This document shows, piece by piece, positions 11,457-53,110 of a stretch of DNA of 64,000 nucleotides (position 1 is its first letter; each line of letters starts with the position of its first letter). The stretch is taken from assembly GCA_002269645.1 (NCBI GenBank), contig NIVC01000153.1, positions 208,703 to 272,702 of the forward strand, given 5' to 3'. The notes under the pieces were generated by a model. That model did not search any database. It had not been told where the DNA came from and worked only from the letters and a program-made list of their open reading frames with translations. The position numbers and the translations under genes are program-made. This DNA comes from Macrostomum lignano (lineage: Eukaryota).

Positions 11457-11526
11457 TGAATCATTTTTGTTACTTTCAAGTGACTTTCACTCATTTCAAT
11501 TAAAATCAACTCTTCTAACCAAACAG

Positions 11527-12435
11527 TGGGATGACGCACTCGAGTTAGTAGAGCCGCTGTCCGATGCTCCAAGCGTGGACATTCGCACAGTCCGATGGGT
11601 CATCCTTCGACACAAATACTTGGAGCTCGTCTGCCTTTGCACTGCTGATGGCGGCGGCGGCGGCGGGAGCGGCCTAGTAGCCGATGAGGTTCTCGCATGT
11701 CTCCAACAACTGGAAGCCGTCAGTCCGTCAAAGGAGGCTCATCGAGAGCTCTGCCTACTGCTCACTGGCGGCGGTTCACCAGACGCGGTTGAAACCCTAG
11801 TCGGCGGCGAAGTGTCCGGCGGTTGGAATCCGAGCGCTGGCAGAGTCGCCTGCTTTCGCCAGCTGCTTCCGCTACTCGAGCCCGTGCTCAAGCTCGACGG
11901 CTTCACCAACCATGGCGGCAGAGGCAACGGCGGCGCCAACATAGCAAGCGGAGATCGCCTGGTGCAGCTGCTGGCCAAAGGCCTGCTGTACGAGACTTGC
12001 GTCGAGGTCTGCCAGGCCAGGGCAACCGGGGCTGACGCGGCCGCTGCTGCTGGTCCATCCCTCCTGACGGAGTCGTCAAGCTCGGCTCTGCAATCGGACG
12101 AGGCCGAATCGGCCAGTACGGCCTCCCTGCTATCCTGGCTGGAGTCAGTGCCGGCCAGCGCCTTCGCCTGCCCGTTCGAGCAGCGCAGCCTCCGGCTGGA
12201 CTTGCGCAGCCTGGCCCGGCCGAGCCTGGAGGCCAGCTGGGCCGACCAACTGCTGGTGGCGCCGCCGCGGCCCAGGGTTTTCCCGCACAGTCACGTGCCA
12301 CACGGCCTCAGCCGGAGTGTCTGCGCTCTGCGAGCCAGCCTGGGAGCGCCGGCGCGACCGTCAGCGGCGGCGGCGGCGGCGGCGGCGGCAACGACTGATG
12401 ACACCGACGCCCCGACAAGAGAGCTTCGGCCTGCG
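11527..12435 (+). CDS. WDR47: WDR47 exon 2
   Basis: WDDALELVEPL...ILRHKYLELVC...DRLVQLLAKGLLYETCVEVCQ...LLSWLESVPASAFACPFEQRSL are conserved WDR47 motifs. 909 nt, phase 0-0. Confidence 0.9.
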
Positions 12436-13284
12436 GTGAGAGCTTTGTGACCATTTGCATGTAGCTTGTACTTTCAGTTTTAACTAAATCAATTATTGAG
12501 ACTTACATAAAATTTCTCAATAAAGATCTTACGCACAAGATAAAGTATGTTATAAAGAAGTGTCATTCCTGAAAACAGGGTGCGTTCAAAAGCACAAAAC
12601 TCGACTGCGCATTCCTGAAAATCATGCTCCCCAAGTTTCGCACCCAAATCTTCTGAATTCGGCATTGAAGAATATGAAAAGCCTACGACAGCTAGAGCCA
12701 ACCAGGAGATTATAAAGAATGGCACCAATCTATGCTTTAATTTCAAAATGACAAAGCGAGATTCATACCGGTATTTTTGAAATTCAACTACGGGCTAGTC
12801 TGAGCCTACATGAGCTATTGTTGAAACCTTGAAAATTCGGCACCGGATCTCGCAACCCCAGCCGTGAATTGTGACGCCTTAACATGCACCATCTCTCTGA
12901 GCCAAAGAGAGCGCAATACAGATGTAATTTTAAGGTCACGAGGTAAGTCTGCTCCCAAAAATATGAGGCTTGGAAATAGTTCTCCCAAATACCCGATACG
13001 CTCGTAGAAATCGCCATCAGACAACGCACGAATCGGTACTACCGGTCCAATTTAACCAACCTTCGAACGTATCTTTGTGATAGTTTATTGCAAAGTACAA
13101 CATTCATTCATTCAAGGATCACAACTGACAGTTAACGAGTTGATCCACTGGCCTCAGTTACTTGATTGATTCTGACAAGTAGAGTTTGTAGTTAAAAGAC
13201 AGTAGGAACCAAACGCGCTTGACCACAAGCATGTTAAAACACCGTTTCAACCGCAACCCGTGACAGACCCTTTCGCCTTGGCAG

Positions 13285-13706
13285 TCGCTGGCCAGCATCA
13301 GGCTGAGCAGCCTCGGCCAGCGACCGAAATCGGCCGGCGCAGCGCCGTCGTCATCTTCGGCGCTTCGCCGTTCGGTAGATCGAATGCTCTCCAACGGCGC
13401 GGCGGAAGCCGACGCCGAGGCTGTCGCCGAGCAGCACCGCCGGCCAATATCGGCGTCGGGAGCGCGCAGGCGCCAAGCGCCCAGCATCATCGCTGAAGAG
13501 CCCGAAGAGATGCTCGACAGTCAGGAAGACCGCATCGAAGAAGCGGACGCAGCTGTAGAAGATGAAGCTGTAGAACAGAACAGGCCGGAGTCGGACGACA
13601 ACGTAGAGACGGCAAACGGCGACGGTGGCGAAGATGCAGCGCAGCTGAGCGACTCGGCTGAGCAGGAGCAGCTGCGAGCCAGCGGGGCGGAGGAGGCAAC
13701 TAGCAG
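13285..13706 (+). CDS. WDR47: WDR47 exon 3 (acidic low-complexity linker)
   Basis: Acceptor TTGGCAG|, donor AG|GTGAGT. Open frame SLASIRLSSLGQRPK...EEATS; phase 0-2. Confidence 0.8.
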
Positions 13707-14015
13707 GTGAGTGATAGGTGACTTAGACATTTGGTATCGATAGGGTTTCACTAGTCAATACTAGAGATCAAAATGGACAGAGAAGCACGAAAATTGCCCC
13801 CCTGAGAATTTCTTAGCCACAGAATGTCTCGCCTAGAATATCTTACGAAGTATAACGAGTGTTAGTCGGCAATCTTAGCCATGCACTCACTGACAAGAAG
13901 TTCGATTCAACCAGACTCCAGCAGCAGTCTTAAAGACCTCTATATTTTTCAGCTCTTTTGCTCGCGCCACCTCTGTAGTTGGCGCCCCCTCTGTAGCTGG
14001 CGCCCACTTCGTTTG

Positions 14016-14297
14016 TGTAACTGGCGCCCGCTTCTTTATGTAACTGGCGCCCGCTTCTTTATGTAACTGACGCCCGCTTCTTTATGTAACTGACGCCCGC
14101 TTCTTTATGTAACTGACGCCCGCTTCTTTATGTAACTGACGCCCGCTTCTTTATGTAACTGACGCCCGCTTCTTTATGTAACTGACGCCCGCTTCTTTAT
14201 GTAACTGACGCCCGCTTCTTTATGTAACTGACGCCCGCTTCTTTATGTAACTGACGCCCGCTTCTTTATGTAACTGACGCCCGCTTCTTTATGTAAC
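14016..14297. repeat. 23-bp minisatellite (~12 copies) in front of the WDR47 exon 4 acceptor
   Basis: Unit TGTAACTGACGCCCGCTTCTTTA. Confidence 0.97.
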
Positions 14298-14323
14298 AAG
14301 AAATCATTTTTCAAATTTCGCAG

Positions 14324-15274
14324 GCCTGGCACTGCGCAGTCGGGCGCTGGGCTGCGCCAAAGTGGCGCCGATTTGTTTCGCGAATATCAGCGCCGGCGCC
14401 AGGCCCTGGTTGCCGATCTGGAGCGCCGGGAACGCGAGCGGCAGCGAATGCAAGCCGACTTAGCTGAGCTGGCAGAGCGAGTCCGTGAGCATCAGCGACA
14501 GCAGGAGGGGGATGAGGAAGCGGAGGAGTCGGTTGAGCCGGCGGATCCGCCAGCAGCAGCGGCAGTTCAAGCGCCGCGTCAGAGCGTCGGCACGCCAAAG
14601 CCATCGGTGCTGCGCTCGTCCGGCGCCTCCGCCCGGTCTGCCGCAGCGTCTGGCAACTGCAACAGCCAGGCCCGGAACGTGCAGCAAAAGTCGTCGTCGC
14701 AAACAGCTCGAAACAGCCCGGCAGCTTCTCAGCAGAGCAGCGCCAGTCGCCGGCCGGGCTCGGCCACAGCGTCGACGAGTAAATCGGCCGTCAGAGCTTC
14801 CGGCGCCGTTCAGTCAGCTCGGCAGACGGCAGCATCGAAAAGTCACAGGTTGTCCGCTAGCATTGCCAACACCGCTTCTATCGCTATTCCAGCCTCGGAG
14901 GCGGCTTCGGCAAGAGCGACATCAGCCAGGGGCTTGGCTCATCTCGTTGTCACCTCGACTACCGATGCTCCAACTCAGCCTGCGTCTGCAACTCCCAGGA
15001 CCTCGGCAAACCTCAGTTCCGTCCCAGCTACAAACAGCGCCTCTCCAGCTGTCGTTTCGAATACAACATCCGCTGGCTTTGGCGCCGCACCGAAGCAAGG
15101 TCCGGCGGTTGCCGCCGACCGATTTGTTGCCATAGCAACAGTGCATGACGCGATGGCTGTGCGGGCCGTAGCTTTCGATCCGAGCGGTCGATTTCTGGCA
15201 ATCGGCTCCAATAGTAAAACCCTGCGCGTCTGCCGGTCGCCGAGTCATCGCCGGCCGCTGCTGTTGCAGGACAA
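14324..15274 (+). CDS. WDR47: WDR47 exon 4 (coiled coil, Ser/Ala linker, first WD40)
   Basis: DLFREYQRRRQALVADL...RFVAIATVHDAMAVRAVAFDPSGRFLAIGSNSKTLRVC; phase 2-2. Confidence 0.9.
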
Positions 15275-15331
15275 GTGAGGGGCATTCGGAGCAATTGCTT
15301 ATTCCTAGGGGTGTGCAGCCTCAGGAGCTTA

Positions 15332-15479
15332 CACTCACGGACATTGAAAAGTATCCACCCTGGTTTAGTGAGCCACTTCTCTCCGATCGCAACTGCAAGT
15401 TACGCAACTGGCAGGCTCACTAGAGAAATGAAAAACAGCTCAGTAGATCAGGGTGGATGGTTTTCAATGTCCGTGAGTG
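15332..15479. mobile_element. 148-bp Tc1/mariner-type MITE
   Basis: 31-bp TIRs CACTCACGGACATTGAAAA(GT/CC)ATCCACCCTG with 2 mismatches, flanked by TA on both sides. Inner inverted repeat TAGTGAGCC/GGCTCACTA. Confidence 0.85.
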
Positions 15480-15569
15480 TATGTGGTTAAGAGCGAACAA
15501 CAAGCATTGAACTTGGTGTACGTACAAAAGTGAAGTGAAGCGCGCAAGACGGAAAAATACAGCGTATGA

Positions 15570-15685
15570 CGGGGGCAGGCTTAAACCGGCTCAGCCAATG
15601 AGGGAGCAGTAAGGAGAGAGGTCAAAGTCAGACGGACGAATCTTAGCCTAAGGGGCAGGCCCAATCTGGCTCAGCCAATGAGAGA
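15570..15685 (+). promoter_or_regulatory. Duplicated CCAAT-box motif (GGGGCAGG...GGCTCAGCCAATGAG x2) in WDR47 intron 4
   Basis: Two similar units ~80 bp apart, each with CAGCCAATGAG. Probably TE-derived; function unproven. Confidence 0.3.
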
Positions 15686-16055
15686 GCATTAAGGAAAGAG
15701 GTTGAAGTTAGACACAAGCAAAGTTGGACAAAGTTGGCAAGAGAAAAGCATTACAAAGCAACCAAGTAAAAAAGCAAGAGCGATTGCTGCAGCTTGAAAA
15801 ACTAGAAAATATTTTATAAAATTTATTAGATTCATATTTAAAAAATATATTAAAAGCAAAAACGCTAGTTTTACTACTGGAAGAGGAGTAGATGAACGCA
15901 TTTTTCTATTGATATATCTAGTGCAACTTTCTAATTCAAATGCAATTGAACCGAGACAATAATATTAAGGCCGACATCTCAATTTGAGTTCTTTTAAAGC
16001 TCTAATTGTCAGCCTCTGCATAATACATGTATTGTGTACACCAATTTCTCTCCAG

Positions 16056-16750
16056 CGACCCCGTCCCAGAGCCGCAATCGGTGTTCACCCGGCCGCGCCT
16101 ACACAAAGGCAGCATCTACTGTCTGGCCTGGTCACCCGACAGCCGCCTCCTGGCCACCGGCAGCAATGATAAGACTGTCCGCCTTTTGGGCATCGATCCT
16201 GACTCCGGACAGCTCATACCGGACTTGGACACCGAGCTCAGTCATCATGACGGCACCGTGAGAGATCTTCGATTTGTTGGCGGCCAACAGGACGGCTCCG
16301 CCATGATGCTCACCGGCGGAGCCGGCGACTGTCGAGTCTTCCTGGTTGACTGCGCCGCTCCTGGGGGCCCCGCGATGCTGCGGGCGATGCCCGGCCACGG
16401 ACAGGCGGTGATGGCGCTGCACAGCTGCAGCCTTGGACAGCCGCTGGTAGTATCGGCCTCGGCCGACAAGACCGCCCGACTGTGGGACCTCCGCTCGCCG
16501 ACTCCCGTCCAGATCGTGGCCGCGCCCAGCCAGTCGGCCTACGCCAGCGTGGCCATCGAGCCGGCTGGCCGACTGCTCGCCTCCGGCCACGACGACGCCA
16601 CGGTGGCCCTGTACGACGTGCGCGGAGCTCGGCACCTGGCGGTTGGCCGGATGCACGCCGACGAGTGTCGGAGCGTCCGATTCTCGGCCGACTGCGGCTA
16701 CCTGCTCACTGCGGGCTACGATGCCAGAGTTCGACTGGCTGATTTACACG
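16056..16750 (+). CDS. WDR47: WDR47 exon 5 (WD40 repeats)
   Basis: HKGSIYCLAWSPDSRLLATGSNDKTVR...HDGTVRDLRF...VSASADKTARLWDLR...LLASGHDDATVALYDVRG...HADECRSVRFS. Donor G|GTGAG. Confidence 0.95.
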
Positions 16751-16753
16751 GTG

Positions 16754-16990
16754 AGCTGCTTTTATCACCCTGCAAATGTACATGTAGCTGCCTTTATCAC
16801 CCTGCAAATGTACATGTAGCTGCTTTTATCACCCTGCAAATGTACATGTAGCTGCTTTTATCACCCTGCAAATGTACATGTAGCTGCTTTTATCACCCTG
16901 CAAATGTACATGTAGCTGCTTTTATCACCCTGCAAATGTACATGTAGCTGCTTTTATCGTACCCTGCAAATGTACATGTAGCTGCTTTTC
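16754..16990. repeat. 32-bp minisatellite (~7 copies) starting at the WDR47 intron 5 donor
   Basis: Unit AGCTGCTTTTATCACCCTGCAAATGTACATGT begins at position +4 of the intron. Confidence 0.95.
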
Positions 16991-26589: not shown

Positions 26590-27243
26590 TCAAAGAGAGG
26601 AGAGGCGACAGAGGGGATAAAAGAAAAGATAAAAGATAATAGGAGAGATGAGGGGGTGAGGACGATGAGAGAGAGGGGGAGAAGAGGGGAGAGAGGAAAA
26701 GCGAGATGAGAGAGCAGAGAGCTACAGGTGAGAGGAGAGAGGAGACAGCAGAGAGGAGAGCAGAGAGGAAACAGGTGAAAGAAGAGATGAGAGAGTAAAG
26801 GGAAGAGAGAAGAGATAAAGATACATCTCTACATCTCGAAGGTTGTAGAGATGAGAGAGGTGGAAGGAGAGATGAGAAATGAGAGATAACAGAGAGAGGA
26901 GAGTGGAGTGAGAGAAGAGAGGGAGACAGAGTATAGACAAGGAAAGAGAAGAGAAAAGAAGAAAGGAGAAAGGAAAGTGAGGAGTCAAAAGAGGGGAAAG
27001 AAAAGAGTACAGATGAAAGAGGTGAGAGAACATATAAGACAGAGATGCCAGATTAAAGAGGGGGATGAGAGAGTAGAGACGAGAGTGAAAAGATAAAAGA
27101 TGGGAGTAGAGAGAACAGAGGAGAGGTTACAGAGACAGAGGAGAGACAAGGTAGAGAAGTGAGTGAGGAGAGAGGAGAGGAAAGAGGAGAATTGAAAGGG
27201 GAGAGAGTAGAGAGAGGAGGAGAGATAAGAGAGAAAGACAGAG

Positions 27244-27295
<52 letters not shown>

Positions 27296-27301
27296 AGAGA
27301 G
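26590..27301. repeat. Polypurine (GA-rich) tract including (AG)n, left half
   Basis: Almost pure A/G on the + strand; continues at 28094-28500 after a TE insertion. Confidence 0.9.
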
Positions 27302-27305
27302 AAAT

Positions 27306-28089
27306 GGCTCATTCCATATAAGCATGGTCGTAACATGACAGGTTATTTTTACTTATAAAATGAAATCTAATAATAGAATATACTAAACCAATATTTTAAA
27401 TGAAAGATTATTTCGTCTAGAATATATTTATAGAGTTTCATATAGATATCATCATTAGTATAGATGCTATTAAACCTTAAATGACACTTATGGTCGTAAC
27501 GACAGGATTTTTGACATATAGAAACTAAAAGGTAAAAGTCTTATAACATTTTTCATTTTTGATATTTTGCAATACATTTTTAAAATTTGACTAAGAACAT
27601 CTTTAGAAATCATACTCTTTTATTAGAATATATAAACTCAAAAGGCAACAAAGATACAAAAGAAAAGGCAGCCTTATGGTCGTAACATTATGGTCGTAAC
27701 ATTTTTTTCTGTCAATTCAGTAACTTTGAGGTACTAATACATTAAAAATATAATAGATTATTTGGTCACCAATGCTTTTATCTGATGATGCAAGTATTAT
27801 ACTTTTATCTATAGTTTGTTTCAACCTTCAAAAGCTTTCTATTTGTTTTTAAAAGGTACAAAATCTTAATGATGTCTTTTGCTTCGAAAAATGTCCAAAT
27901 TTTTACAAAAATGACTTTTTGCCAATTGATAACATACTAATCCAACATTTTACCATTCCTTTATTCATAGATTGTATATATTGCACAATATAAACATTTG
28001 GTAAAAAAATAGGCTAATTAGGCAATGGCAAGCAAAAATATTGACTTTTTTCTATTTTCCAAATGTGTCCATCTTATATGGAATGAGCC
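27306..28089. mobile_element. 784-bp non-autonomous TIR element, Sola1-like
   Basis: 17-bp perfect TIR GGCTCATTCCATATAAG; 4-bp TSD AAAT (AWWT type); four internal ATGGTCGTAAC motifs. Confidence 0.8.
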
Positions 28090-28093
28090 AAAT

Positions 28094-28500
28094 GAGAAGA
28101 GATAAGAGAGAAAAGATAAAAGAAGAGAAAGGAAAAATGAGAGAGCAAAGACGAGAGAGAAAAGAGGTGAGGAAGAGACGAGAGAAGAGGGGAGAGATGA
28201 GAGTAGGCTAGAGGAGAGAGTTAAGAGAAGAGAGAAAAGAATACAAAGGAGAAGGAAGATAAGAGAGAAGAGGGGGTGAGAGGAGAGAGGAGAGGGGGAG
28301 AGAGGAGAGAGGAGAGGAGAGAGAAAACAAAAAAGTAGAGAGGAGAGAGGAGAGGAGAGAGAAAAGAAGAGACAAGAGATGAGATAAGAGAGATAAAAGA
28401 GAAGAGAGATGAGGGAAGATACGAGAGAAGAGGGGAGAGAGGAGATAGGAGAGACAAGGGATGAGAGAGATGAGAGGAAACAAAGAGACAATAGAAATTT
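28094..28500. repeat. Polypurine (GA-rich) tract, right half
   Basis: A/G-rich degenerate GAGAGGA units. Confidence 0.9.
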
Positions 28501-33546: not shown

Positions 33547-34532
33547 ACTTGTTAACTAAACAGACCCTACTCAACTGCATGCAAAAGTGCAAATCAGAAC
33601 CTATCCTACTCAGCCAGCTGGGAGATATGAGCAGTCGTGATTCTTACCTAGCCTGGCTATCAAAGCCACTGATTGAGCATGCCAACAAGGTGCTAAGCAA
33701 AGACTTGAATAAATCTGGCGAGCGTCTATACGATCATTGGTGCCGTCGAACCCGCAAAGAGTGCTTCATGGCCAGCTATCAGAATGAATTCTTTCGAGCC
33801 TCCTATTGTATTAACCGGCTAGCAATATCCGCCAGGTCTTACATCCAGGCTGCCGATCAGATATGCGCCGACGTGCCCGAATTCATGGATTTTCTACGCT
33901 CTGTTAGGCACGTTATCAGCATTGGCTGCGGTCCCGGCTCCGATGCCATTGGCCTGTTAGCCTTTCTTGGTTGCGGCTTGCCGCAGCAGCAGGAGCAAGA
34001 AAAAGCCGAACTGCAGGAGCAGCAGCGCATTGTATTCTACATGATTGACCAGTGCGACAGCTGGGCCGACTACGTGTCCGCGTTGGACGCGCATCTAGTC
34101 GATACTGGCTCCTCGTTGTGGTTCAAACCGCTCCGATTTAAAGATATTGGCCACGAGGCCTATCTGCCGCCGGCTGATATGATTGTATTTAGCTTTGCCA
34201 ATACGGCACTGATGGATCCGCAGCTCTGGCCGCAGTTGGTCCGGCGCTACAGACTAGTATTAGTGCTTGACAGCGTCCGCGAGACACTCAAAGACGAATA
34301 CGACGGTTGCAAGTTTAATTCGTTTCAGCTTAGCGATCGAACTCGGTGCTATTTTCATCTGGCTGGCTATTCCACTACTAATAGTAGTAAAAAAGAAAAT
34401 TTAGATGATTCGCCCGAAGCTGCCAAGGTTGACACCGAGGCGGCGATGCCGCCGCCATCGCCAATGTCTGAGCCGTCACCGACGCCTACGACGTCTGACG
34501 CGCCGGATGTTGCTTCTATAGCCAACGATTGA
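33547..34532 (+). CDS. Uncharacterised class I SAM-dependent methyltransferase-like protein (terminal or only coding exon)
   Basis: 327-codon open frame after acceptor TTCTGCAG|; first ATG at 33579. Motif I VISIGCGPGSD, acidic post-beta2 FYMIDQ, and beta4-like PPADMIVFSF. Acidic/Pro-rich tail. Upstream exons not resolved. Confidence 0.7.
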
Positions 34533-34809: not shown

Positions 34810-35285
34810 TGATCCATCGCACCTTGGCACTCCACCCGCCCCCTTGATACTCTATCCGCCCCCTTTATGCTCCATCCGCCCTACCTTGTACTCACCCACC
34901 CCTTTATACTCCATCTGCCCCTAAATACTCCACCCGCCCCCTTGATACTCCACCCGCCCCCTTGATACTCTATCCACCCCTAGATACTCTATCCGCACCA
35001 CCTGGTACTCCACCTGCCCCCTTTATGCTTTATCCGCCCCCTTGATACTCTATCCACCCCTAGATACTCTATCCGCACCACCTGGTACTCCACCTGCCCC
35101 CTTTATGCTCCATCCGCCCTACCTTGTACTCACCCACCCCTTTATACTCCATCTGCCCCTAAATACTCCACCCGCCCCCCTTGATACTCTATCCACCCCT
35201 AGATACTCTATCCGCACCACCTGGTACTCCACCTGCCCCCTTTATGCTTTATCCCCCCCTTGATACTCTATCCGCCCCTACATAC
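34810..35285. repeat. C-rich complex minisatellite (~20-bp TACTCCACCCGCCCCTTGA-type units with a higher-order duplication)
   Basis: Repeated TACTC(C/T)A(C/T)CCGCCCC; the ~34840-35040 block is repeated at ~35040-35280. Confidence 0.9.
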
Positions 35286-37906: not shown

Positions 37907-37998
37907 AGACGTCACACTGCACGGCCTTGTTGGCTAAGGCCTCCCCGGATTGGTGCACGAAAGAGCTAGTGAACGGACGATCATCCGCTATTATATAA
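37907..37998 (+). promoter_or_regulatory. Putative prohormone promoter: CRE-like site, reverse CCAAT and TATA box
   Basis: AGACGTCA at 37907-37914, GATTGG near 37948, and TATATAA at 37992-37998, ~100 bp upstream of the ATG. An octamer ATGCAAAT lies at 37463-37470. Confidence 0.5.
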
Positions 37999-38098
37999 GC
38001 GTCGTCCGCTACAGGAAATCTTACCGATCTTACCAAGTCTTGGCAGATAAATTTTGCTTCGATAAATCTAACCAGCCTAGTCCTCTCCAGTTTTGCCG

Positions 38099-38623
38099 AT
38101 GCGCAGCAAAGTTGTCTCACTGGGCCAGGCCGGGCGCCTCCTGGTCGCGCTGCTTTTGGCTATGACAGTCTTTGCTTCACTTTCCGACGGGCAGCCTCTG
38201 CGCGGCGAGGATGGCTTCGCCGAGACGGACAACGGTGCCGTCAGTGACTGGTCTGTCAGCCGGTCTCTGTTCGGAAGTCCGGACAGGTACAAGCGTCTGT
38301 TCGGCACTACTGACAGGTACAAGCGTCTGTTCGGCACTCCTGACAGGTACAAGCGTCTGTTCGGCACTCCTGACAGGTACAAGCGTCTGTTCGGCACTCC
38401 TGACAGGTACAAGCGTCTGTTCGGCACTCCTGACAGGTACAAGCGTCTGTTCGGCACTCCTGACAGGTACAAGCGTCTGTTCGGCACTCCGCTGGACCGA
38501 TTTCGACGACGCGACGCCAAGCGACTGTTCGGTTTCAAGCAGGCAAATCGGTTTCGACGGTTCTACCGGACGGGCTCGTACTTTGACGCTAGGCCTGACC
38601 GGTTCAAGCGTTTTGACGAGTGA
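38099..38623 (+). CDS. Secreted neuropeptide prohormone (LFGTPDRY-repeat precursor), 174 aa
   Basis: Hydrophobic signal (RLLVALLLAMTVFASLSDG), acidic spacer, then KR/RR-delimited peptides: SLFGSPDRY, LFGTTDRY, 5x LFGTPDRY, LFGTPLDRF, LFGFKQANRF, FYRTGSYFDARPDRF. Confidence 0.9.
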   Translation: MRSKVVSLGQAGRLLVALLLAMTVFASLSDGQPLRGEDGFAETDNGAVSDWSVSRSLFGSPDRYKRLFGTTDRYKRLFGTPDRYKRLFGTPDRYKRLFGTPDRYKRLFGTPDRYKRLFGTPDRYKRLFGTPLDRFRRRDAKRLFGFKQANRFRRFYRTGSYFDARPDRFKRFDE

Positions 38624-39689
38624 CTCGATATCCGTTCCGTTCCGTCCGCGTCCTGCACGTGCGAACTGATTTGTTAAACACGTTATCTATTGCATGTGCT
38701 ATATAGACGACGCTTATAACAAAATAAGAACTCTGAACTATTGTGAACTGAACAATTTAGTCTGCTATATCGCAGTTTATTCCTCGTCTCCTTGGTTGTT
38801 CGAAGAGTAGGCCCAGCTTCCTGACTCCCTTAGGGGAGCTTTGGAAAGTTCCCTATCAATACATACTACTGAGAAGCTACTCGTAACCACTATGGACTGC
38901 CTAAGGAACTCAATGTCTTGTTCGTGCATAATCAGATGCACACTCCGAGATTGCCGGTAACTCGTCTGCGCACAGGACCATATCAAGGGAAATAGTCAAA
39001 AGAATCCTGTTCAATTAAACTCTGCTTCTCAGTCTGCAGGCTCTGCAAGGTGTAGTACATGTATACCCATGCTCGAGTACGTGTGATTAAAAATTAAAAT
39101 AGCATAAGTCTGGAACCCCTATCTGTCGTATCCAAAAGCTTGATGCAAATTGGCATTGATTCTTCTGTCAGCAGCTAAACTGAAAGCTAGCCTATAGAAG
39201 CTATATACTCTGTCATACCGAGAGATGGGTTACTGCATTGTGCTGGCAATCATCGAAAATCCATGCCAGTGCGCGCCCCGAGAAAAATGCTGAGCTGCTT
39301 GGTTGGAGGTGAGAGTAAAATAATTATTTTTCTGAAGCTGTGAAGGCATCCTGAATTCATTAGCCATATGGCTTTCCATTTTTGAATAGAATGTTATTCC
39401 CTACTCAGAATCTGCAACACAGAGCCTGCCATCTAGGACGAGAATAGCTTTGCGAGTAAATTACAATGAAAGTGAACTGCTTGCCATTATGCATAGCTAA
39501 TGCGTTTTCTAAATTGTATTTTCCACGGCTCACGTATAACAAGCAGTCTGCGATTCCCTGGATACTGATAGATTATATAGAGATTGCTTATGGAGACCTA
39601 TAGCCTATATCAATATACACACGATCACAGCAGGTGTAATAAATATTGTTAGGTTTTTTTTCTTTCAAAAAACAGGCTATCTGTTAACT

Positions 39690-40334: not shown

Positions 40335-41056
40335 TGTGTTCACCTCTGTTTGTGTCCAGCTACCCCAGTTTGTGTCTAGCTACCCAGTTTGTGTCTAGCT
40401 ACTTTGTGTCCAGCTACCCCAGTTTGTGTCTAGCTACCTCAGTTTATGTCTAGCTACCTCAGTTTATGTCTAGCTACCCCAGTTTGTGTCCAGCTACCCC
40501 AGTTTGTGTCTAGCTACCCCAGTTTATGTCCAGCTACCACAGTTTGTGTCTAGCTACCTCTGTTTGTGTCTAGCTACCTCAGTTTGTGTCTAGCTACCCC
40601 AGTTTATGTCCAGCTACCTCAGTTTGTGTCTAGCTACCTCCGTTTGTGTCTAGCTACCTCAGTTTGTGTCCAGCTACCCCAGTTTGTGTCTAGCTACCTT
40701 AGTTTGTGTCTTAACTATCCCAGCTTGTGTCTAGCTACCTCAGTTTGTGTCTAGCTGCCTCAGTTTGTGTCTAGATACCTCAGATTGTGTCTAGCTACCC
40801 CAGTTTGTGTCTAACTATCCCAGCTTGTGTCTAGCTACCTCAGTTTGTGTCTAGCTACCTCAGTTTGTGTCTAGCTACCTCAGTTTGTGTCTTAACTATC
40901 CCAGCTTGTGTCTAGCTACCTCAGTTTGTGTCTAGCTGCCTCAGTTTGTGTCTAGATACCTCAGATTGTGTCTAGCTACCCCAGTTTGTGTCTAACTATC
41001 CCAGCTTGTGTCTAGCTACCTCAGTTTGTGTCCAGCTACCCCAGTTTGTGTCTAGC
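40335..41056. repeat. 20-bp minisatellite block A
   Basis: Unit TAGCTACC(C/T)CAGTTTGTGTC. Confidence 0.97.
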
Positions 41057-41690
41057 CAATTCTATCTCTTATTAAATTTATTTTCCTGGTGATAAATATC
41101 TGCTAAAAAAGTTAGTTCGCAATGCTGGCGACAGATTTGCACTTGTAAAATATGCAGATATTTTTGTAGCAACAGTATTCACAAATGACTCATCGGGCAG
41201 AAAGAAGCAGGTGGTCAGGCAAAATTGTTTTAATGATTATGGTAGCAGAAAAATAGAATGAATAGAATAGAATACATACTATACAGCAACACACTAAATT
41301 CACATGTATAGGTAATATATGAATACTGAAAGTTTGCTGTAGTGGCATTAGTGCATACTGACAATATCTAGAAAGTCTATAAATATATCTAAAATCTTAT
41401 TTGTTTTAATTAATGAGATCTGAAGGGCAAACGCAATAATAAATTAATGGCTTTGGTGAAAAATTAACTGTTTATGTTGCTTTGAATTCAGGATTAAATC
41501 GGGCGAGAAATATTTTGAAAATAATTTACGAATAATTATTAATAGTATACAAAAATTATTAATAGTAAACAATGAATTCTAGAATTTTGTGAGAAAATTA
41601 TGCTCAAATTGGTTGTGCATTTATCGTTATAAAGTGCAGTATTGGCTATATTACATGTATCTGTACTAACTATGCCACTATCGTGTCTAC

Positions 41691-42957
41691 TAGCTACCTC
41701 AGTTTGTGTCTAGCTACCCCAGTTTGTGTCTAGCTACCTCAGTTTGTGTCTAGCTACCCCAGTTTGTGTCTAGCTACCTCAGTTTGTGTCTAGCTACCCC
41801 AGTTTGTGTCTAGCTACCTCAGTTTGTGTCTAGCTACCCCAGTTTGCGTCTAGCTACCCCAGTTTGTGTCTAGCTACCTCAGTTTGTGTCTAGCTACCCC
41901 AGTTTGTGTCTAGCTACCCCAGTTTGTGTCTAGCTACCTCAGTTTGTGTCTAACTACCTCAGTTTGTGTCTAGCTACCTCAGTTTGTGTCTAGCTACCCC
42001 AGTTTGTGTCTAGCTACCTCAGTTTGTGTCTACCTACGTCAGCTTGTGTCTAGATACCTCAGATTGTGTCTAGCTACCCCAGTTTGTGTCTAGCTACCTC
42101 AGTTTGTGTCTAACTACCCCAGTTTATGTCTAGATACCTCAGATTGTGTCTAGCTACCCCAGTTTGTGTCTAGCTACCTCTGTTTGTGTCCAGCTACCCC
42201 AGTTTGTGTCTAGCTACCTTAGTTTGTGTCTTAACTATCCCAGCTTGTGTCTAGCTACCTCAGTTTGTGTCTAGCTACCTCAGTTTGTGTCTAACTACCT
42301 CAGTTTGTGTCTAGCTACCTCAGTTTGTGTCTAGCTACCCCAGTTTGTGTCTAGCTACCTCAGTTTGTGTCTACCTACGTCAGCTTGTGTCTAGATACCT
42401 CAGATTGTGTCTAGCTACCCCAGTTTGTGTCTAGCTACCTCAGTTTGTGTCTAACTACCTCAGTTTGTGTCTAGCTACCTCAGTTTGTGTCTAGCTACCC
42501 CAGTTTGTGTCTAGCTACCTCAGTTTGTGTCCAGCTACCCCAGTTTGTGTCTAGCTACCCCAGTTTGTGTCTAGCTACCCCAGTTTGTGTCTAGCTACCT
42601 CAGTTTGTGTCTAGCTACCTCAGTTTGTGTCCAGCTACCCCAGTTTGTGTCCAGCTACCCCAGTTTGTGTCTAGCTACCCCAGTTTGTGTCTAGCTCTCT
42701 CAGTTTGTGTCTAGCTACCCCAGTTTGTGTCTAGCTACCTCAGTTTGTGTCTAGCTACCCCAGTTTGTGTCTAGCTCTCTCAGTTTGTGTCCAGCTACCC
42801 CAGTTTGTGTCTAGCTACCCCAGTTTGTGTCTAGCTACCCCAGTTTGTGTCTAGCTACCCCAGTTTGTGTCTAGCTACCTCAGTTTGTGTCTAGCTACCT
42901 CAGTTTGTGTCTAGCTACCCCAGTTTGTGTCTAGCTACCTCAGTTCGTGTCTAGCTA
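41691..42957. repeat. 20-bp minisatellite block B (~63 copies), directly downstream of the Kirre-like stop codon
   Basis: Same unit as block A; ends <10 bp from the TGA at 42965. Confidence 0.97.
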
Positions 42958-47335: not shown

Positions 47336-47342
47336 TAGATTA

Positions 47343-48522
47343 GGTGTGAGATTAGGTGGGAGATCAGGTGGGAGATCAGGTGTGAGATCAGATGTGAGAT
47401 CAGATGTGAGATCAGGTGGGAGATCAGATGTGAGATCAGGTGGGAGATCAGGTGAGAGATCAGGTGTGAGATCAGGTGTGAGATCAGGTGTGAGATCAGG
47501 TGTGAGATCAGGTGTGAGATCAGGTGTGAGATCAGATGTGTGTTCAGATGTGAGATCAGGTGGGAGATCAGGTGAGAGATCAGGTGGGAGATCAGGTGAG
47601 AGATCAGGTGGGAGATCAGGTGTGAGATCAGGTGTGAGATCAGATGGGGGATCAGGTGTGAGATCAGGTGGGAGATCAGGTGGGAGATCAGGTGGGAGAT
47701 GAGGTGTGAGATGAGGTGTGAGATCAGGTGTGAGATCAGGTGGGAGATCAGGTGTGAGATCAGATGTGAGATCAGGTGGGAGATCAGTGGGAGATCAGGT
47801 GTGAGATCAGGTGTGAGATCAGGTGTGAGATCAGGTGTGAGATCAGTGGGAGATCAGGTGTGAGATCAGGTGTGAGATCAGGTGTGAGATCAGGTGTGAG
47901 ATCAGGTGTGAGATCAGATGTGTGTTCAGATGTGAGATCAGGTGTGAGATCAGGTGTGAGATCAGGTGTGAGATCAGATGTGTGTTCAGATGTGAGATCA
48001 GGTGGGAGATCAGGTGAGAGATCAGGTGGGAGATCAGGTGAGAGATCAGGTGAGAGATCAGGTGTGAGATCAGGTGTGAGATCAGGTGTGAGATCAGGTG
48101 TGAGATCAGGTGGGAGATCAGTGGGAGATCAGGTGTGAGATCAGGTGAGAGATCAGGTGTGAGATCAGGTGTGAGATCAGATGTGTGTTCAGATGTGAGA
48201 TCAGGTGGGAGATCAGGTGAGAGATCAGGTGGGAGATCAGGTGAGAGATCAGGTGAGAGATCAGGTGTGAGATCAGGTGTGAGATCAGGTGTGAGATCAG
48301 TGGGAGATCAGGTGTGAGATCAGGTGTGAGATCAGGTGTGAGATCAGGTGTGAGATCAGGTGTGAGATCAGATGTGTGTTCAGATGTGAGATCAGGTGGG
48401 AGATCAGGTGTGAGATCAGGTGTGAGATCAGGTGAGAGATCAGGTGAGAGATCAGGTGTGAGATCAGGTGTGAGATCAGGTGTGAGATCAGGTGTGAGAT
48501 CAGGTGTGAGATCAGGTGTGAG
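47343..48522. repeat. 12-bp minisatellite (~98 copies)
   Basis: Unit GAGATCAGGTG(T/G/A) with higher-order variant blocks. Confidence 0.97.
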
Positions 48523-48590
48523 ATAGAGTTCGAGACAGGCCATGTAAAGTCCATATCGCATTTTCGCAAAGTCACGGATAAGCCGCTGAC

Positions 48591-48739
48591 CTTCCACGTG
48601 CAGCAGAATCACGCCCGAGTGGGTGCCCAGCCCATTATCCGCGGTGCAGTTGTACTCCCCGGAGTCGGAAGGCTGCACCTCGTCGAAGTGCAGAAAGGCC
48701 GACGTGCCGCCTACGAAGTCTTCGCGGTAGAGGCGACGC
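48591..48739 (-). CDS. Kirre-like exon 6 (end of Ig5)
   Basis: [49 protein letters not shown]; phase 2-1. Confidence 0.9.
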
Positions 48740-48780
48740 CTGTCGGATATTTTAATTGTCATCCAGCTTCTAATACACCT

Positions 48781-49343
48781 ATTCACCAACTCCAGATACC
48801 ATTCCCCAGCACCAGGCAGTATTCACCAACTCCAGATAGCGTTCACCAACTCCAGATAGCGTTCACCAACTCCAGATAGCATTCACCAACTCCAGATAGC
48901 ATTCACCAACTCCAGATAGCATTCACCAACTCCAGATAGCGTTCACCAACTCCAGATAGCATTCACAAACCGAGATAGCATTCACCAACTCCAGATAGCA
49001 TTCACCAACTCCAGATAGCGTTCACCAACTCCAGATAGCATTCACCAACTCCAGATAGCATTCACAAACCGAGATAGCATTCACCAACTCCAGATAGCAT
49101 TCACCAACTCCAGATAGCGTTCACCAACTCCAGATAGCATTCACCAACTCCAGATAGCATTCACAAACCGAGATAGCATTCACCAACTCCAGATAGCATT
49201 CACCAACTCCAGATAGCATTCACCCACTCCAGAGAGCATTCACCAACACCAACTCCAGATACCATTAACCCACTCCAGAGAGCATTCACCAACACCAACT
49301 CCAGATACCATTCACCTACTCCAAATAGCATTCACCAACTCCA
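48781..49343. repeat. 20-bp minisatellite
   Basis: Unit ATTCACCAACTCCAGATAGC; fills intron 5 nearly end to end. Confidence 0.97.
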
Positions 49344-49362
49344 GGCAGCTTTCTGATCGCAC

Positions 49363-49998
49363 CTGAGCCCGGGCTCCACCGCGGTGCCGTCGCCGCGGCT
49401 CCATCGGACGCCGTCGGGCTCGATCGGCAGCGGCACGGAATTGACGCGGCACTCCAACCGTACCGATCGCTGGCCAGCCACAACTACGTAGCGCTGACGA
49501 TCGACGTTGACGCCGCTTCCATCAGACGACGTCGCGGACGCAGCCACCGCCGTCGGGACGCCGGCCGACACAACCCGAGGCGGCGCCGCCCTAGCCAGGA
49601 TGACTCGACGCGTCACTGTGGGGAAGCCGGTCGTGCTGGCTGAGCAGGTGTACTCGCCGAAGTCCGCCTCGCCAACCGGGTCCAGACGGAGCGTCGCCGA
49701 TCGGCCAAGGACATCGCCGTCACCTCTGTCGACGCGGCGCCATTCAACAGAGGCCGTCGGGCTGGACTCGACGCGGCAGTCGAGGCTGGCGATGCCTCCC
49801 GGCGAAGCCGCGTACAGCCGGGGCAGGTTGAGCGCGAACTTCGGACCGTAGTGGACGCGCAGGCGGACTTCAGCCTCGCCGCGGGCGAAGCTGGTTGCCG
49901 AGCAGCGGACGGTCCGACCGTCATGCCGACGGGTGAGAAGCATTGGGAGGCGCGGGCCGAACTGCTGGATGATCGGCTCCAGACTGTCTATGGTCCAA
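49363..49998 (-). CDS. Kirre-like exon 5 (Ig3 end, Ig4, Ig5 start)
   Basis: WTID...VRCSAT...LRVHYGPKF...ASLDCRVESSPTASVEWRR...DFGEYTCSA...VRLECRVNSVP; phase 2-2. Confidence 0.92.
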
Positions 49999-50252
49999 CT
50001 GAAAGGGGGAGAGAAATTTATATAAATCATGACTACAGTCTACAGACTACAGTCTATGGTCGAAACCCCGGGGTTTCGCGCTGCGGCTAGGCGCCTGGAG
50101 TGGCCCATCTGGGGTTTTGAGAATATGTCTGGGGCTGAAGCTACTTCTTGCATTGAATTTGCGCCAGCGGTCAGCAATGTCTCAACTTCTGAACTTCCGA
50201 ATTCCAACTGAAGCCAGCATGTGTTTCGTCCGAGGTATTTTTTCGACAACAG

Positions 50253-51642: not shown

Positions 51643-51659
51643 CTGCGGGTTTTGCGGAT

Positions 51660-53110
51660 GTTGTTGGAGGTTTCGGATGTTGAGGGAGGTTGCGGTTGTT
51701 GAGGGAGGTTGCGGTTGTTGAGGGAGGTTGCGGTTGTTGAGGGAGGTTGCGGTTGTTGAGGGAGGTTGCGGTTGTTGAGGGAGGTTGCGGTTGTTGAGGG
51801 AGGTTGCGGTTGTTGAGGGAGGTTGCGGATGTTGAGGGAGGTTGCGGTTGTTGAGGGAGGTTGCGGTTGTTGAGGGAGGTTGCGGTTGTTGAGGGAGGTT
51901 GCGGTTGTTGAGGGAGGTTGCGGTTGTTGAGGGAGGTTGCGGATGTTGAGGGAGGTTGCGGTTGTTGAGGGAGGTTGCGGTTGTTGAGGGAGGTTGCGGT
52001 TGTTGAGGGAGGTTGCGGTTGTTGAGGGAGGTTGCGGTTGTTGAGGGAGGTTGCGGGTGTTGAGGGAGGTTGCGGTTGTTGAGGGAGGTTGCGGTTGTTG
52101 AGGGAGGTTGCGGTTGTTGACGGAGGTTGCGGTTGTTGAGGGAGGTTGCGGTTGTTGAGGGAGGTTGCGGTTGTTGAGGGAGGTTGCGGTTGTTGAGGGA
52201 GGTTGCGGTTGTTGAGGGAGGTTGCGGGTGTTGAGGGAGGTTGCGGTTGTTGAGGGAGGTTGCGGTTGTTGAGGGAGGTTGCGGTTGTTGACGGAGGTTG
52301 CGGTTGTTGAGGGAGGTTGCGGTTGTTGAGGGAGGTTGCGGATGTTGAGGGAGGTTGCGGATGTTGAGGGAGGTTGCGGTTGTTGAGGGAGGTTGCGGTT
52401 GTTGAGGGAGGTTGCGGTTGTTGAGGGAGGTTGCGGATGTTGAGGGAGGTTGCGGTTGTTGAGGGAGGTTGCGGTTGTTGAGGGAGGTTGCGGTTGTTGC
52501 TGGAGGTTGCGGTTGTTGCTGGAGGTTGCGGTTGTTGCTGGAGGTTGCGGTTGTTGAGGGAGGTTGCGGTTGTTGAGGGAGGTTGCGGTTGTTGAGGGTG
52601 TTGTGGGATGTTTAGATGGGAGGTTGCGGTTGTTGTGGATGTTGTGATTGTTGCGGGAGGTTCCAGCTGTTGCGGGAGGTTGCGGTTGTTGTGGATGTTG
52701 TGATTGTTGCGGGAGGTTCCAGCTGTTGCGGGAGGTTCCAGCTGTTGCGGGAGGTTCCAGCTGTTGCGGGAGGTTCCAGCTGTTGCGGGAGGTTCCAGCT
52801 GTTGCGGGAGGTTCCAGCTGTTGCGGGAGGTTCCAGCTGTTGCGGGAGGTTCCAGCTGTTGCGGGAGGTTCCAGCTGTTGTGGGAGGTTCCAGCTGTTGC
52901 GGGAGGTTCCAGCTGTTGCGGGAGGTTCCAGCTGTTGTGGGAGGTTCCAGCTGTTGCGGGAGGTTCCAGCTGTTGCGGGAGGTTCCAGCTGTTGCGGGAG
53001 GTTCCATCTGTTGCGGGAGGTTCCAGCTGTTGTGGGAGGTTCCAGCTGTTGCGGGAGGTTCCATCTGTTGCGGGAGGTTCCAGCTGTTGTGGGAGGTTGC
53101 TGCAGATGTT
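51660..53110. repeat. G-rich 19-bp minisatellite with two sub-arrays
   Basis: AGGGAGGTTGCGGTTGTTG (~51660-52600), then GCGGGAGGTTCCAGCTGTT (~52650-53100). Confidence 0.97.

What the first reader, a model, noticed from the sequence alone, without database searches (positions are those of the whole stretch)
38099..38623. Unrecognised neuropeptide precursor releasing non-amidated LFG...RY/RF peptides
Seen: a signal peptide, an acidic spacer and ten dibasic-delimited peptides: 5x LFGTPDRY, LFGTTDRY, SLFGSPDRY, LFGTPLDRF, LFGFKQANRF and FYRTGSYFDARPDRF. All end in RY or RF, but none has the Gly needed for amidation. Most share an N-terminal LFG. Known: KR/RR are prohormone convertase sites, and RFamide/RYamide activity normally requires amidation from a C-terminal Gly. 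Inference: a distinct free-acid peptide family I cannot assign to a named family, implying its own receptor. This is the strongest candidate for a new signalling system in the window.
Basis: partly seen in the sequence, partly recalled or inferred. Interest (0 to 1): 0.8.

Follow-up and report, generated by a model that had tools for sequence, protein, structure and literature searches.

The report
Unnamed flatworm multi-copy secreted peptide precursor
This is a real, transcribed Macrostomum lignano gene, listed in GenBank only as a hypothetical protein, that has the layout of a peptide-hormone precursor and would release about ten short non-amidated peptides; it is a plausible new flatworm peptide family, but not a new kind of system.

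Summary
Window 38099-38623 (+) is one uninterrupted 174-codon ORF. It has a signal-peptide-like N-terminus, an acidic spacer and ten peptides: SLFGSPDRY, LFGTTDRY, 5x LFGTPDRY, LFGTPLDRF, LFGFKQANRF and FYRTGSYFDARPDRF. Each ends in R-Y or R-F, is followed by KR, RR or RRR, and lacks a Gly amidation donor.

The window is Macrostomum lignano scaffold NIVC01000153.1. The gene is BOX15_Mlig028865g1, a "hypothetical protein" whose transcript-derived model has lost three repeat units. Two near-identical duplicate loci carry 7 and 8 core units.

No homologue was found outside M. lignano among 1.84 billion representative proteins; every other hit was a repeat artefact. No Pfam family matches. No paper I could search mentions the peptide.

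Free-acid R-Y/R-W/R-F neuropeptides are already confirmed by mass spectrometry in flatworms (planarian 1020HH, schistosome and cestode npp-27). In the spp-15/npp-26 family, amidation differs between lineages. The conserved Arg also completes a furin-type R-X-[KR]-R site at all ten C-termini.

Neuronal expression, actual processing and a receptor are untested. Verdict: probably a real secreted, convertase-processed peptide precursor of an unnamed family, a new member of a known kind. Interest is moderate.

The parts
37992..37998 (+). TATA-box-like element (TATATAA), about 100 bp upstream of the ATG; putative core promoter
   Evidence: Read directly. Identical in the two duplicate loci L001 and L002. 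No ATG lies between it and 38099. Function is inferred, not shown.
38099..38623 (+). Complete single-exon CDS of the precursor (174 aa plus stop) = BOX15_Mlig028865g1 / PAA89328.1
   Evidence: ORF. The window is identical to NIVC01000153.1 over 20.5 kb. The annotated 144-aa model lacks three 30-bp units.
38099..38185 (+). Signal-peptide-like N-terminus (residues 1-29, MRSKVVSLGQAGRLLVALLLAMTVFASLS)
   Evidence: Hydropathy profile and the -3/-1 rule. This is heuristic; SignalP was not available.
38186..38263 (+). Acidic spacer (DGQPLRGEDGFAETDNGAVSDWSVSR) ending in a monobasic Arg
38264..38476 (+). Seven core units: SLFGSPDRY-KR, LFGTTDRY-KR and 5x LFGTPDRY-KR (30-bp minisatellite)
   Evidence: TRF: 38266-38490, period 30, 7.5 copies, 97% match. 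Unit coordinates and codons. Copy number is 7 in the window and L002 and 8 in L001.
38477..38512 (+). Diverged unit LFGTPLDRF-RRR
   Evidence: Arg is coded by CGA here versus AGG in the core units.
38513..38524 (+). DA-KR linker
38525..38560 (+). Diverged unit LFGFKQANRF-RR (LFGFEQANRF in L001)
38561..38611 (+). Longest peptide FYRTGSYFDARPDRF-KR
38612..38623 (+). C-terminal tail FDE plus TGA stop

Best explanation
The gene encodes a secreted prepropeptide of the neuropeptide/peptide-hormone type.

Shown from the sequence:
- A signal-peptide-like N-terminus.
- An acidic pro-region.
- Ten peptides, each followed by KR, RR or RRR, and each sitting in an R-X-[KR]-R context.

Inferred mechanism:
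- The signal peptide directs the precursor into the ER.
- Subtilisin-like proprotein convertases cut after the basic pairs. Candidates are PC2, which is neuronal and essential in M. lignano, and/or furin.
- A carboxypeptidase E/D-type enzyme trims the basic residues.
- Because no Gly is present, the products keep a free carboxyl terminus.
- One precursor yields about 7 copies of the octapeptide LFG[TS][PT]DRY-OH plus LFGTPLDRF-OH, LFGFKQANRF-OH and FYRTGSYFDARPDRF-OH.
- These are released from secretory vesicles and act as intercellular signals on an unidentified receptor.

The family signature is a C-terminal [PTLA]-[DN]-R-[YF]-OH, usually with an N-terminal LFG. Copy number changes in frame through minisatellite expansion and contraction, which adjusts peptide dose per precursor.
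For: - ORF, peptide array and cleavage sites.
- Signal-peptide features.
- Non-random arrangement and synonymous codon variation at the conserved Gly, Arg and dibasic positions in the old units.
- The gene model comes from a purely transcript-based annotation, so it is transcribed.
- In all three duplicated loci the ORF is open and copy number differs only by whole 30-bp units.
- A TATA box about 100 bp upstream is conserved in all copies.
- M. lignano has a nervous-system-expressed PC2 whose knock-down is lethal: PMC4490696.
- Precedent in the same phylum for free-acid, dibasic-flanked peptides ending in R-Y/W/F, detected by MS and expressed in the CNS: 1020HH, PMC2953531.
- Precedent for multi-copy KR-delimited arrays that are non-amidated in some lineages: npp-26.
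Against: - There is no expression pattern, no peptidomic detection and no receptor.
- No homologue was found in any other species, so there is no cross-species conservation of the peptides. That conservation is the usual criterion for calling a neuropeptide.
- The three M. lignano copies differ by only about 1% everywhere. The CDS is no better conserved than its flanks, and the 4 coding differences are all non-synonymous, so there is no power to show purifying selection.
- Seven of the ten peptides come from a young minisatellite, in a genome where 15% of the DNA is simple or tandem repeat.
- The R-X-K/R-R context fits ubiquitous furin as well as neuroendocrine PC2, so processing would not require a neuron.
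Confidence: 0.55

Rival explanations
1. The processing logic is the same, but the product is exocrine rather than neural. Gland cells (prostate/seminal-fluid, pharyngeal, epidermal or other) process the precursor with furin and export the peptides as pheromone-like, seminal-fluid, defensive or antimicrobial agents.
For: All ten sites fit the furin consensus R-X-[KR]-R, which constitutive-pathway cells can cut. The apparent restriction to one lineage and the rapid copy-number change are typical of reproductive or defensive secreted products. Rapid evolution of reproduction-related genes is reported in Macrostomum, but I know this only from the title of PMC7336406 and did not read it for this point.
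Against: Short peptides of 8-15 residues that are neither cationic-amphipathic nor Cys-rich do not look like typical antimicrobial peptides or toxins. The Mlig gene IDs were not found in the supplements of three M. lignano expression studies. That is weak evidence, because the stored tables may be truncated or use other IDs.
Confidence: 0.2
2. It is a highly diverged M. lignano orthologue of an already named flatworm family, either 1020HH/npp-27 (YLxGG[ILV]R[YWF]-OH) or spp-15/npp-26 (FDPIxF). In that case it is not a new family.
For: Shared features are free-acid octapeptide-sized products ending in R-aromatic (1020HH) or aromatic (npp-26), dibasic flanks, multi-copy arrays, and a signal peptide followed by an acidic spacer. 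Profile searches with either family found no canonical member among M. lignano proteins, so neither slot is visibly filled by another annotated gene.
Against: The defining cores are absent: there is no GG[ILV]R and no FDPI. The 1020HH core is extremely conserved, with identical YLTGGIRY in a planarian and a gastropod, so drift to LFGTPDRY would be out of character. hhalign against the 1020HH profile gives 2% probability and aligns only the signal peptide. Small precursors are easily missed by annotation, so the lack of a canonical M. lignano hit is weak evidence.
Confidence: 0.12
3. It is a transcribed but functionless or very young ORF. A 30-bp minisatellite expanded inside a transcribed region and happens to read as periodic 'peptides'. 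Alternatively, it is a secreted repetitive protein that is never cleaved, for example a Tyr/Lys-containing structural or tanning substrate.
For: The window holds dozens of minisatellites (78 TRF rows). Other minisatellites in it also create long ORFs, for example 48118-48789. No orthologue was found. The coding differences between copies are all non-synonymous.
Against: The diverged units outside the minisatellite keep LFG, R-[FY] and the dibasic pair while using different codons. Their arrangement was reached in 0 of 200,000 nucleotide shuffles and 41 of 200,000 amino-acid shuffles. A signal peptide sits exactly at the first ATG downstream of a conserved TATA box. Basic residues occur almost only as the pairs that delimit the units, which is not expected of a structural repeat.
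Confidence: 0.12

Closest known systems
Planarian 1020HH-1/-2 and schistosome/cestode npp-27 prohormones (peptides YLTGGIRY, QSYLTGGIRY, YSYLKGGIRW, NYLKGGLRF, LPYLIGGIRY)
   Same: Small precursor with a signal peptide and an acidic spacer. Products are about 8-10 residues, flanked by KR/KK/RRR, have no Gly and so carry a free C-terminal carboxyl, and end in Arg-aromatic. In S. mediterranea the free-acid forms were sequenced by MS/MS and the gene is expressed in the lateral cephalic ganglia (PMC2953531). This shows that non-amidated R-Y/R-F peptides are an established flatworm signalling class.
   Different: The invariant Y-[LI]-x-G-G-[ILV]-R core is absent; the window peptides have [PT]-D-R with an acidic residue at -3. 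There are ten copies instead of 1-3. There is no profile similarity (hhalign 2%), and the profile search does not retrieve the M. lignano protein.
Planarian spp-15 and schistosome/cestode npp-26 (FDPIQF-amide; SYFDPILF, NFDPILF, YFDPILF free acids)
   Same: A tandem array of 5-9 very short peptides, each delimited by KR, behind a signal peptide and spacer. They are non-amidated in schistosomes and cestodes. Each has an aromatic residue near the N-terminus, an internal Pro and a C-terminal aromatic. The window's last peptide even contains SYFD.
   Different: The core F-[DN]-P-I-x-[FY] is not present. There is no Arg at -2. The planarian members are amidated. The profile search found no M. lignano member.
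RFamide/RYamide peptides (FLPs, NPF/NPY, luqin/RYamide)
   Same: The C-terminal dipeptide is R-F or R-Y, and some FLP precursors are multi-copy.
   Different: The Gly amidation donor that defines these families is absent from all ten copies. The resemblance is confined to two residues, and those also form part of an R-X-K/R-R cleavage site.
Kex2/furin-processed repeat precursors outside neurons (fungal alpha-factor-type pheromones and Kex2-processed repeat proteins). Cited from general knowledge, not tested here.
   Same: Signal peptide, pro-region, and tandem identical short peptides separated by dibasic sites. Copy number varies through repeat slippage.
   Different: A different kingdom, different spacer logic, and no sequence relationship. 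This is an analogy only.

Membership tests
Neuropeptide/peptide-hormone prohormone (operational definition) | N-terminal signal peptide | tested here: met
   Basic n-region, 13-residue hydrophobic core with Kyte-Doolittle mean up to 2.9, and small residues at -3/-1. This is a heuristic; no SignalP run was possible.
Neuropeptide/peptide-hormone prohormone (operational definition) | Repeated or conserved short peptides flanked by mono- or dibasic convertase sites | tested here: met
   Ten peptides, each followed by KR, RR or RRR, and all in an R-X-[KR]-R context. The arrangement was reached in 0 of 200,000 nucleotide shuffles and 41 of 200,000 amino-acid shuffles.
Neuropeptide/peptide-hormone prohormone (operational definition) | The gene is transcribed | tested here: met
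   Indirect. Gene models BOX15_Mlig028865g1, 015463g1 and 016576g1 exist, and the GenBank annotation of Mlig_3_7 is derived only from transcript assemblies (PMC5730564). I saw no read-level data.
Neuropeptide/peptide-hormone prohormone (operational definition) | Conservation of peptide and cleavage sites in other species | tested here: inconclusive
   No homologue outside M. lignano in 5.8e9 clustered or 1.84e9 representative proteins. Free-living flatworm proteomes are poorly represented in those collections, and no eukaryote genome search tool was available.
Neuropeptide/peptide-hormone prohormone (operational definition) | Expression in neurons or endocrine cells, and detection of the processed peptides | not testable with these tools
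   No expression or peptidomic resource for M. lignano was reachable. ID searches in the supplements of PMC7336406, PMC5946080 and PMC12896417 found nothing.
1020HH / npp-27 | Free-acid peptides ending in Arg-aromatic, flanked by dibasic sites | tested here: met
   One search compared.
1020HH / npp-27 | Conserved core Y-[LI]-x-G-G-[ILV]-R-[YWF] | tested here: not met
   The window peptides read LFG[TS][PT]DRY...LDRF...ANRF and ...PDRF. All 17 family members retrieved keep GG[ILV]R, or SGIR in one Littorina copy.
1020HH / npp-27 | Detectable sequence or profile similarity of the precursor | tested here: not met
   The profile search with A1 retrieved no M. lignano protein. hhalign of A2 against A1 gave probability 2.1% and aligned only the signal peptide.
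spp-15 / npp-26 | Core F-[DN]-P-I-x-[FY] repeated between KR sites | tested here: not met
   The KR-delimited array is present but the FDPI core is not. The profile search with A4 retrieved no M. lignano protein.
RFamide / RYamide peptides (FLP, NPF/NPY, luqin) | C-terminal Gly preceding the basic site (amidation donor) | tested here: not met
   None of the ten peptides has Gly before the basic residues.
Any Pfam-A family | Score above the curated threshold with a real domain match | tested here: not met
   The only hit is UbiD_N at 31 bits with 0 individually significant stretches, summed over the repeats. It is an artefact.

The most novel reading that the evidence does not exclude
LFGxxDRY-OH and its -DRF/-NRF siblings are the ligands of a so far undescribed free-acid peptide signalling system, with a dedicated receptor. 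The system would be restricted to Macrostomorpha, or be present but unrecognised in other early-branching flatworms or spiralians. It would be independent of both the 1020HH/npp-27 and the spp-15/npp-26 systems.
Probability: 0.35. Interest if true: 0.5.

Novelty: new member of a known kind. Interest (0 to 1): 0.35.

Why it matters
M. lignano is a transgenic, RNAi-tractable flatworm model, but I found no published neuropeptidome for it in the searchable library.

If the peptides are real, this gene adds an abundant, easily synthesised ligand (seven copies per precursor) for receptor deorphanisation and behavioural or regeneration assays. Many platyhelminth rhodopsin-type GPCRs are still orphans.

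It would also be a third flatworm example of signalling peptides that do without C-terminal amidation. That bears on how strictly motif-based neuropeptide mining, which usually demands G[KR][KR], should be applied.

The finding also exposes a systematic annotation error. Transcript-derived gene models collapse in-frame repeat units, so deposited proteins under-report peptide copy number.

It does not overturn any concept, because the precursor logic is textbook.

Tried and rejected
1. The phmmer scan of 1.84e9 representatives gave 124 hits with E <= 1e-3. I inspected 58 of them. Apart from the M. lignano paralogue, all are period-10 tandem-repeat artefacts with no signal peptide or cleavage logic. 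The most tempting was P0016 (LFSSPVRY-RK repeats). It is an AT-rich 30-bp minisatellite on a 1-kb contig, open in several frames. P0033 is a Xylariaceae fungal protein without dibasic sites.

2. The Pfam hit to UbiD_N is a repeat-summed artefact.

3. I tried to show purifying selection by comparing the three duplicated loci. Divergence is about 1% everywhere and the CDS is indistinguishable from its flanks, so the test has no power.

4. A perfect 13-nt inverted repeat (TATAAGCGTCGTC) brackets the gene. The downstream arm is not conserved exactly in the duplicate loci. Among 100 whole-window shuffles, 5 reached the observed count when 2 mismatches were allowed. I rejected it as a functional element or a transposon end.

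5. Alternative frames are by-products of the repeat. The +3 ORF (38172-38669) and the antisense ORF (38077-38538) have no ATG at the listed bacterial start codon and no signal peptide.

6. Literature:
- The peptide string and the gene IDs return zero papers.
- The motif is absent from the text and supplements of Collins 2010, although PDF extraction inserts spaces into sequences.
- It is absent from PMC9495596.
- It is absent from the 30 T. crassiceps npp sequences, which I read in full.
- McVeigh 2009 (PMC2749192) is not held. Koziol 2016 was not looked up or read. A prior naming in either cannot be excluded.

Full report
**1. What is in the sequence**

Window 38099-38623 (+) is one uninterrupted ORF of 174 codons. 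Its parts are:
- A basic N-terminus, a 13-residue hydrophobic core (LLVALLLAMTVFA) and a small-residue cleavage context (SLS|D). Together these are the n/h/c layout of a signal peptide.
- A 26-residue acidic spacer ending in a single Arg.
- An array of ten peptides: SLFGSPDRY, LFGTTDRY, five LFGTPDRY, LFGTPLDRF, LFGFKQANRF and FYRTGSYFDARPDRF.
- A DA linker and an FDE tail.

Each peptide is followed by KR, RR or RRR. None has a Gly before the basic residues.

Two qualifications apply. SLFGSPDRY is released at its N-terminus by a monobasic site. Seven of the ten units are a near-perfect 30-bp minisatellite (38266-38490, 7.5 copies, 97% match).

**2. Is it more than chance?**

The window is full of minisatellites (78 TRF rows), so the repeat alone proves nothing. 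The informative part is the diverged 144-nt tail.
- It contains three further R-[FY]-[KR]-[KR] endings. That count was reached in 0 of 200,000 nucleotide shuffles and 41 of 200,000 amino-acid shuffles.
- Two further LFG starts occur there.
- The conserved residues are written with different codons from the core units: Gly GGA/GGC/GGT, Arg AGG/CGA/CGG, and basic pairs AAG-CGT, CGA-CGA-CGC or CGA-CGG.

That is the signature of old duplicates held by selection on the peptide termini and cleavage sites. A TATATAA element lies about 100 bp upstream with no intervening ATG, and it is identical in the duplicated loci.

**3. Provenance and annotation**

The only database relatives are Macrostomum lignano proteins. 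The window is identical over 20.5 kb to GenBank scaffold NIVC01000153.1 of assembly GCA_002269645.1.

The gene is BOX15_Mlig028865g1 (PAA89328.1), annotated as "hypothetical protein". Two duplicate loci exist: Mlig015463g1 on NIVC01001384.1 and Mlig016576g1 on NIVC01000169.1. This fits the known large-scale duplication in the DV1 line (PMC5730564).

The deposited proteins are 144, 144 and 124 aa. The genomic ORFs are 174, 184 and 174 aa. The models therefore skip 3, 4 and 5 whole 30-bp units.

Each unit contains ...GACAG|GTAC..., which can serve as both donor and acceptor. An aligner can therefore place a canonical in-frame "intron" wherever a collapsed short-read transcript meets the genome. 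I read this as repeat collapse; real in-frame splicing is not excluded.

The GenBank annotation of this assembly was built only from transcript assemblies, so the existence of the models is indirect evidence that the gene is transcribed.

**4. Search for relatives**

- The word-indexed search of 5.8e9 clusters and the exhaustive phmmer scan of 1.84e9 representatives returned no credible homologue outside M. lignano.
- I read 58 of the 124 phmmer hits. All were period-10 repeat artefacts, including the superficially striking LFSSPVRY-RK contig.
- Pfam gives only a repeat-summed artefact.
- The three M. lignano copies are about 99% identical in coding and flanking DNA alike, so they say nothing about constraint.

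The absence of homologues is weak evidence, because free-living flatworm proteomes are barely represented in these collections and no eukaryotic genome search was available.

**5. Comparison with what is known**

Three sources correct the premise that an R-Y/R-F ending without Gly is anomalous: the planarian prohormone catalogue (PMC2953531), the Schistosoma comparison in the same paper, and the 30 Taenia crassiceps npp precursors (PMC11196405 supplement).

*1020HH / npp-27.* Planarian 1020HH-1/-2 and schistosome/cestode npp-27 encode dibasic-flanked peptides ending in R-Y, R-W or R-F with no Gly: YLTGGIRY, QSYLTGGIRY, YSYLKGGIRW, NYLKGGLRF, LPYLIGGIRY. The free-acid planarian forms were sequenced by MS/MS, and 1020HH-2 is expressed in the lateral cephalic ganglia.

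*spp-15 / npp-26.* This is a KR-delimited tandem array. It is amidated in the planarian (FDPIQF-G-KR) and non-amidated in schistosomes and cestodes (SYFDPILF-KR).

The kind of system is therefore known. Membership is another matter:
- The window peptides lack the invariant GG[ILV]R core of 1020HH. That core is so conserved that a gastropod protein carries the identical YLTGGIRY.
- They also lack the FDPI core of npp-26.
- Profile searches with either family retrieve no M. lignano protein.
- hhalign against 1020HH aligns only the signal peptide, at 2% probability.

I therefore do not file the gene under either family. Because no canonical M. lignano member of either family was found, extreme divergence cannot be formally excluded (rival 2, about 0.12).

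**6.

All ten peptide C-termini sit in R-X-[KR]-R, the furin-type consensus (established knowledge of proprotein convertase specificity). The conserved Arg at -2 may thus serve cleavage as much as receptor recognition.

In 1020HH, by contrast, the R-aromatic ending is kept even in copies at the very end of the protein, where no cleavage is needed. In the M. lignano precursor every copy is followed by basic residues, so the two roles cannot be separated.

The motif also means that a non-neuronal, furin-expressing gland cell could process the precursor. This keeps an exocrine role (pheromone, seminal-fluid or defensive peptide) alive as rival 1.

**7. Most likely mechanism**

Shown: the ORF, the signal-like N-terminus, the sites, the absence of Gly, the transcript-derived gene model, and the frame-preserving copy-number variation.

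Inferred:
- ER entry.
- Cleavage by PC2 and/or furin. PC2 is nervous-system-expressed and essential in M. lignano (PMC4490696).
- Carboxypeptidase trimming.
- Release of about seven LFG[TS][PT]DRY-OH octapeptides plus three longer -DRF/-NRF peptides as intercellular signals on an unknown receptor.

I put about 0.55 on a neuro/endocrine signalling precursor and about 0.2 on an exocrine peptide precursor. I put about 0.12 on a non-functional or uncleaved repeat protein. Separately, I put about 0.12 on it being a diverged member of a named family.

**8. Verdict**

This is probably a real, previously unnamed flatworm peptide precursor. The unnamed status holds only as far as I could search: McVeigh 2009 is not held and Koziol 2016 was not read.

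It is a new member of a known kind, not a new kind. Its interest is moderate: useful to flatworm neurobiology and to annotation practice, and not surprising to a specialist.

Noticed in passing
window 38099-38623; L001 10001-10555; L002 10001-10525: The deposited GenBank proteins for all three loci (144, 144 and 124 aa) are shorter than the uninterrupted genomic ORFs (174, 184 and 174 aa) by exactly 3, 4 and 5 units of 30 bp. Each unit carries ...GACAG|GTAC..., so a canonical in-frame 'intron' can be placed anywhere in the array. This is probably transcript repeat-collapse, so the annotation under-reports peptide copy number.
   Followed up: partly
P0142 (Littorina saxatilis KAK7113587.1), not in the window: A gastropod hypothetical protein has a signal peptide and the KR/KK-flanked peptides YTLTSGIRY and YLTGGIRY. 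The latter is identical to the MS-confirmed planarian 1020HH-2 peptide. The 1020HH/npp-27 family therefore seems to extend beyond flatworms to molluscs. I found no paper in the searchable library saying so.
   Followed up: partly
window 37994-38006 and 38706-38718: A perfect 13-nt inverted repeat (TATAAGCGTCGTC / GACGACGCTTATA) brackets the gene. The upstream arm overlaps the TATA box. The downstream arm is exact only in this copy, not in L001 or L002, so it is probably fortuitous.
   Followed up: yes
window 38081-38090: A pyrimidine tract followed by AG (tcctctccag) lies 9 nt upstream of the ATG. It looks like a 3' splice or SL trans-splice acceptor. About 39% of M. lignano genes are reported as trans-spliced (PMC5730564). 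L001 also tolerates a 19-bp deletion just upstream, consistent with this being UTR.
   Followed up: no
window 33549-34532 (+): The upstream neighbour is an annotated 329-aa gene (L004 5445-6434) with no Pfam hit. It contains an ISIGCGPGSD stretch that resembles SAM-methyltransferase motif I. Its C-terminus runs into a C-rich 20/39-bp minisatellite (34829-35278).
   Followed up: no
window 11467-16851 (+): ORFs here match the WDR47 cross-over region (PF25602, E=9e-23) and WD40 repeats. They are probably exons of one WDR47-like gene, interrupted by minisatellites at 13992-14297 and 16754-16989.
   Followed up: no
window 48118-50030 (-): Immunoglobulin-domain ORFs (Ig_3, E=1e-12) lie on the minus strand. 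The adjacent 12-bp minisatellite (47337-48524, 99 copies) is read through as (TPDL)n/(ISHL)n in one ORF. This is another example of repeats inflating ORFs in this genome.
   Followed up: no
window 26600-28500 and 51650-53100: There are long purine-rich (GA)n-like tracts with extreme GC and AT skew (26.6-28.5 kb) and a 19-bp G-rich minisatellite of 76 copies (51652-53100). Related 20-bp arrays lie at 40342-41056 and 41690-42957. Tandem repeats occupy a large share of the window.
   Followed up: no
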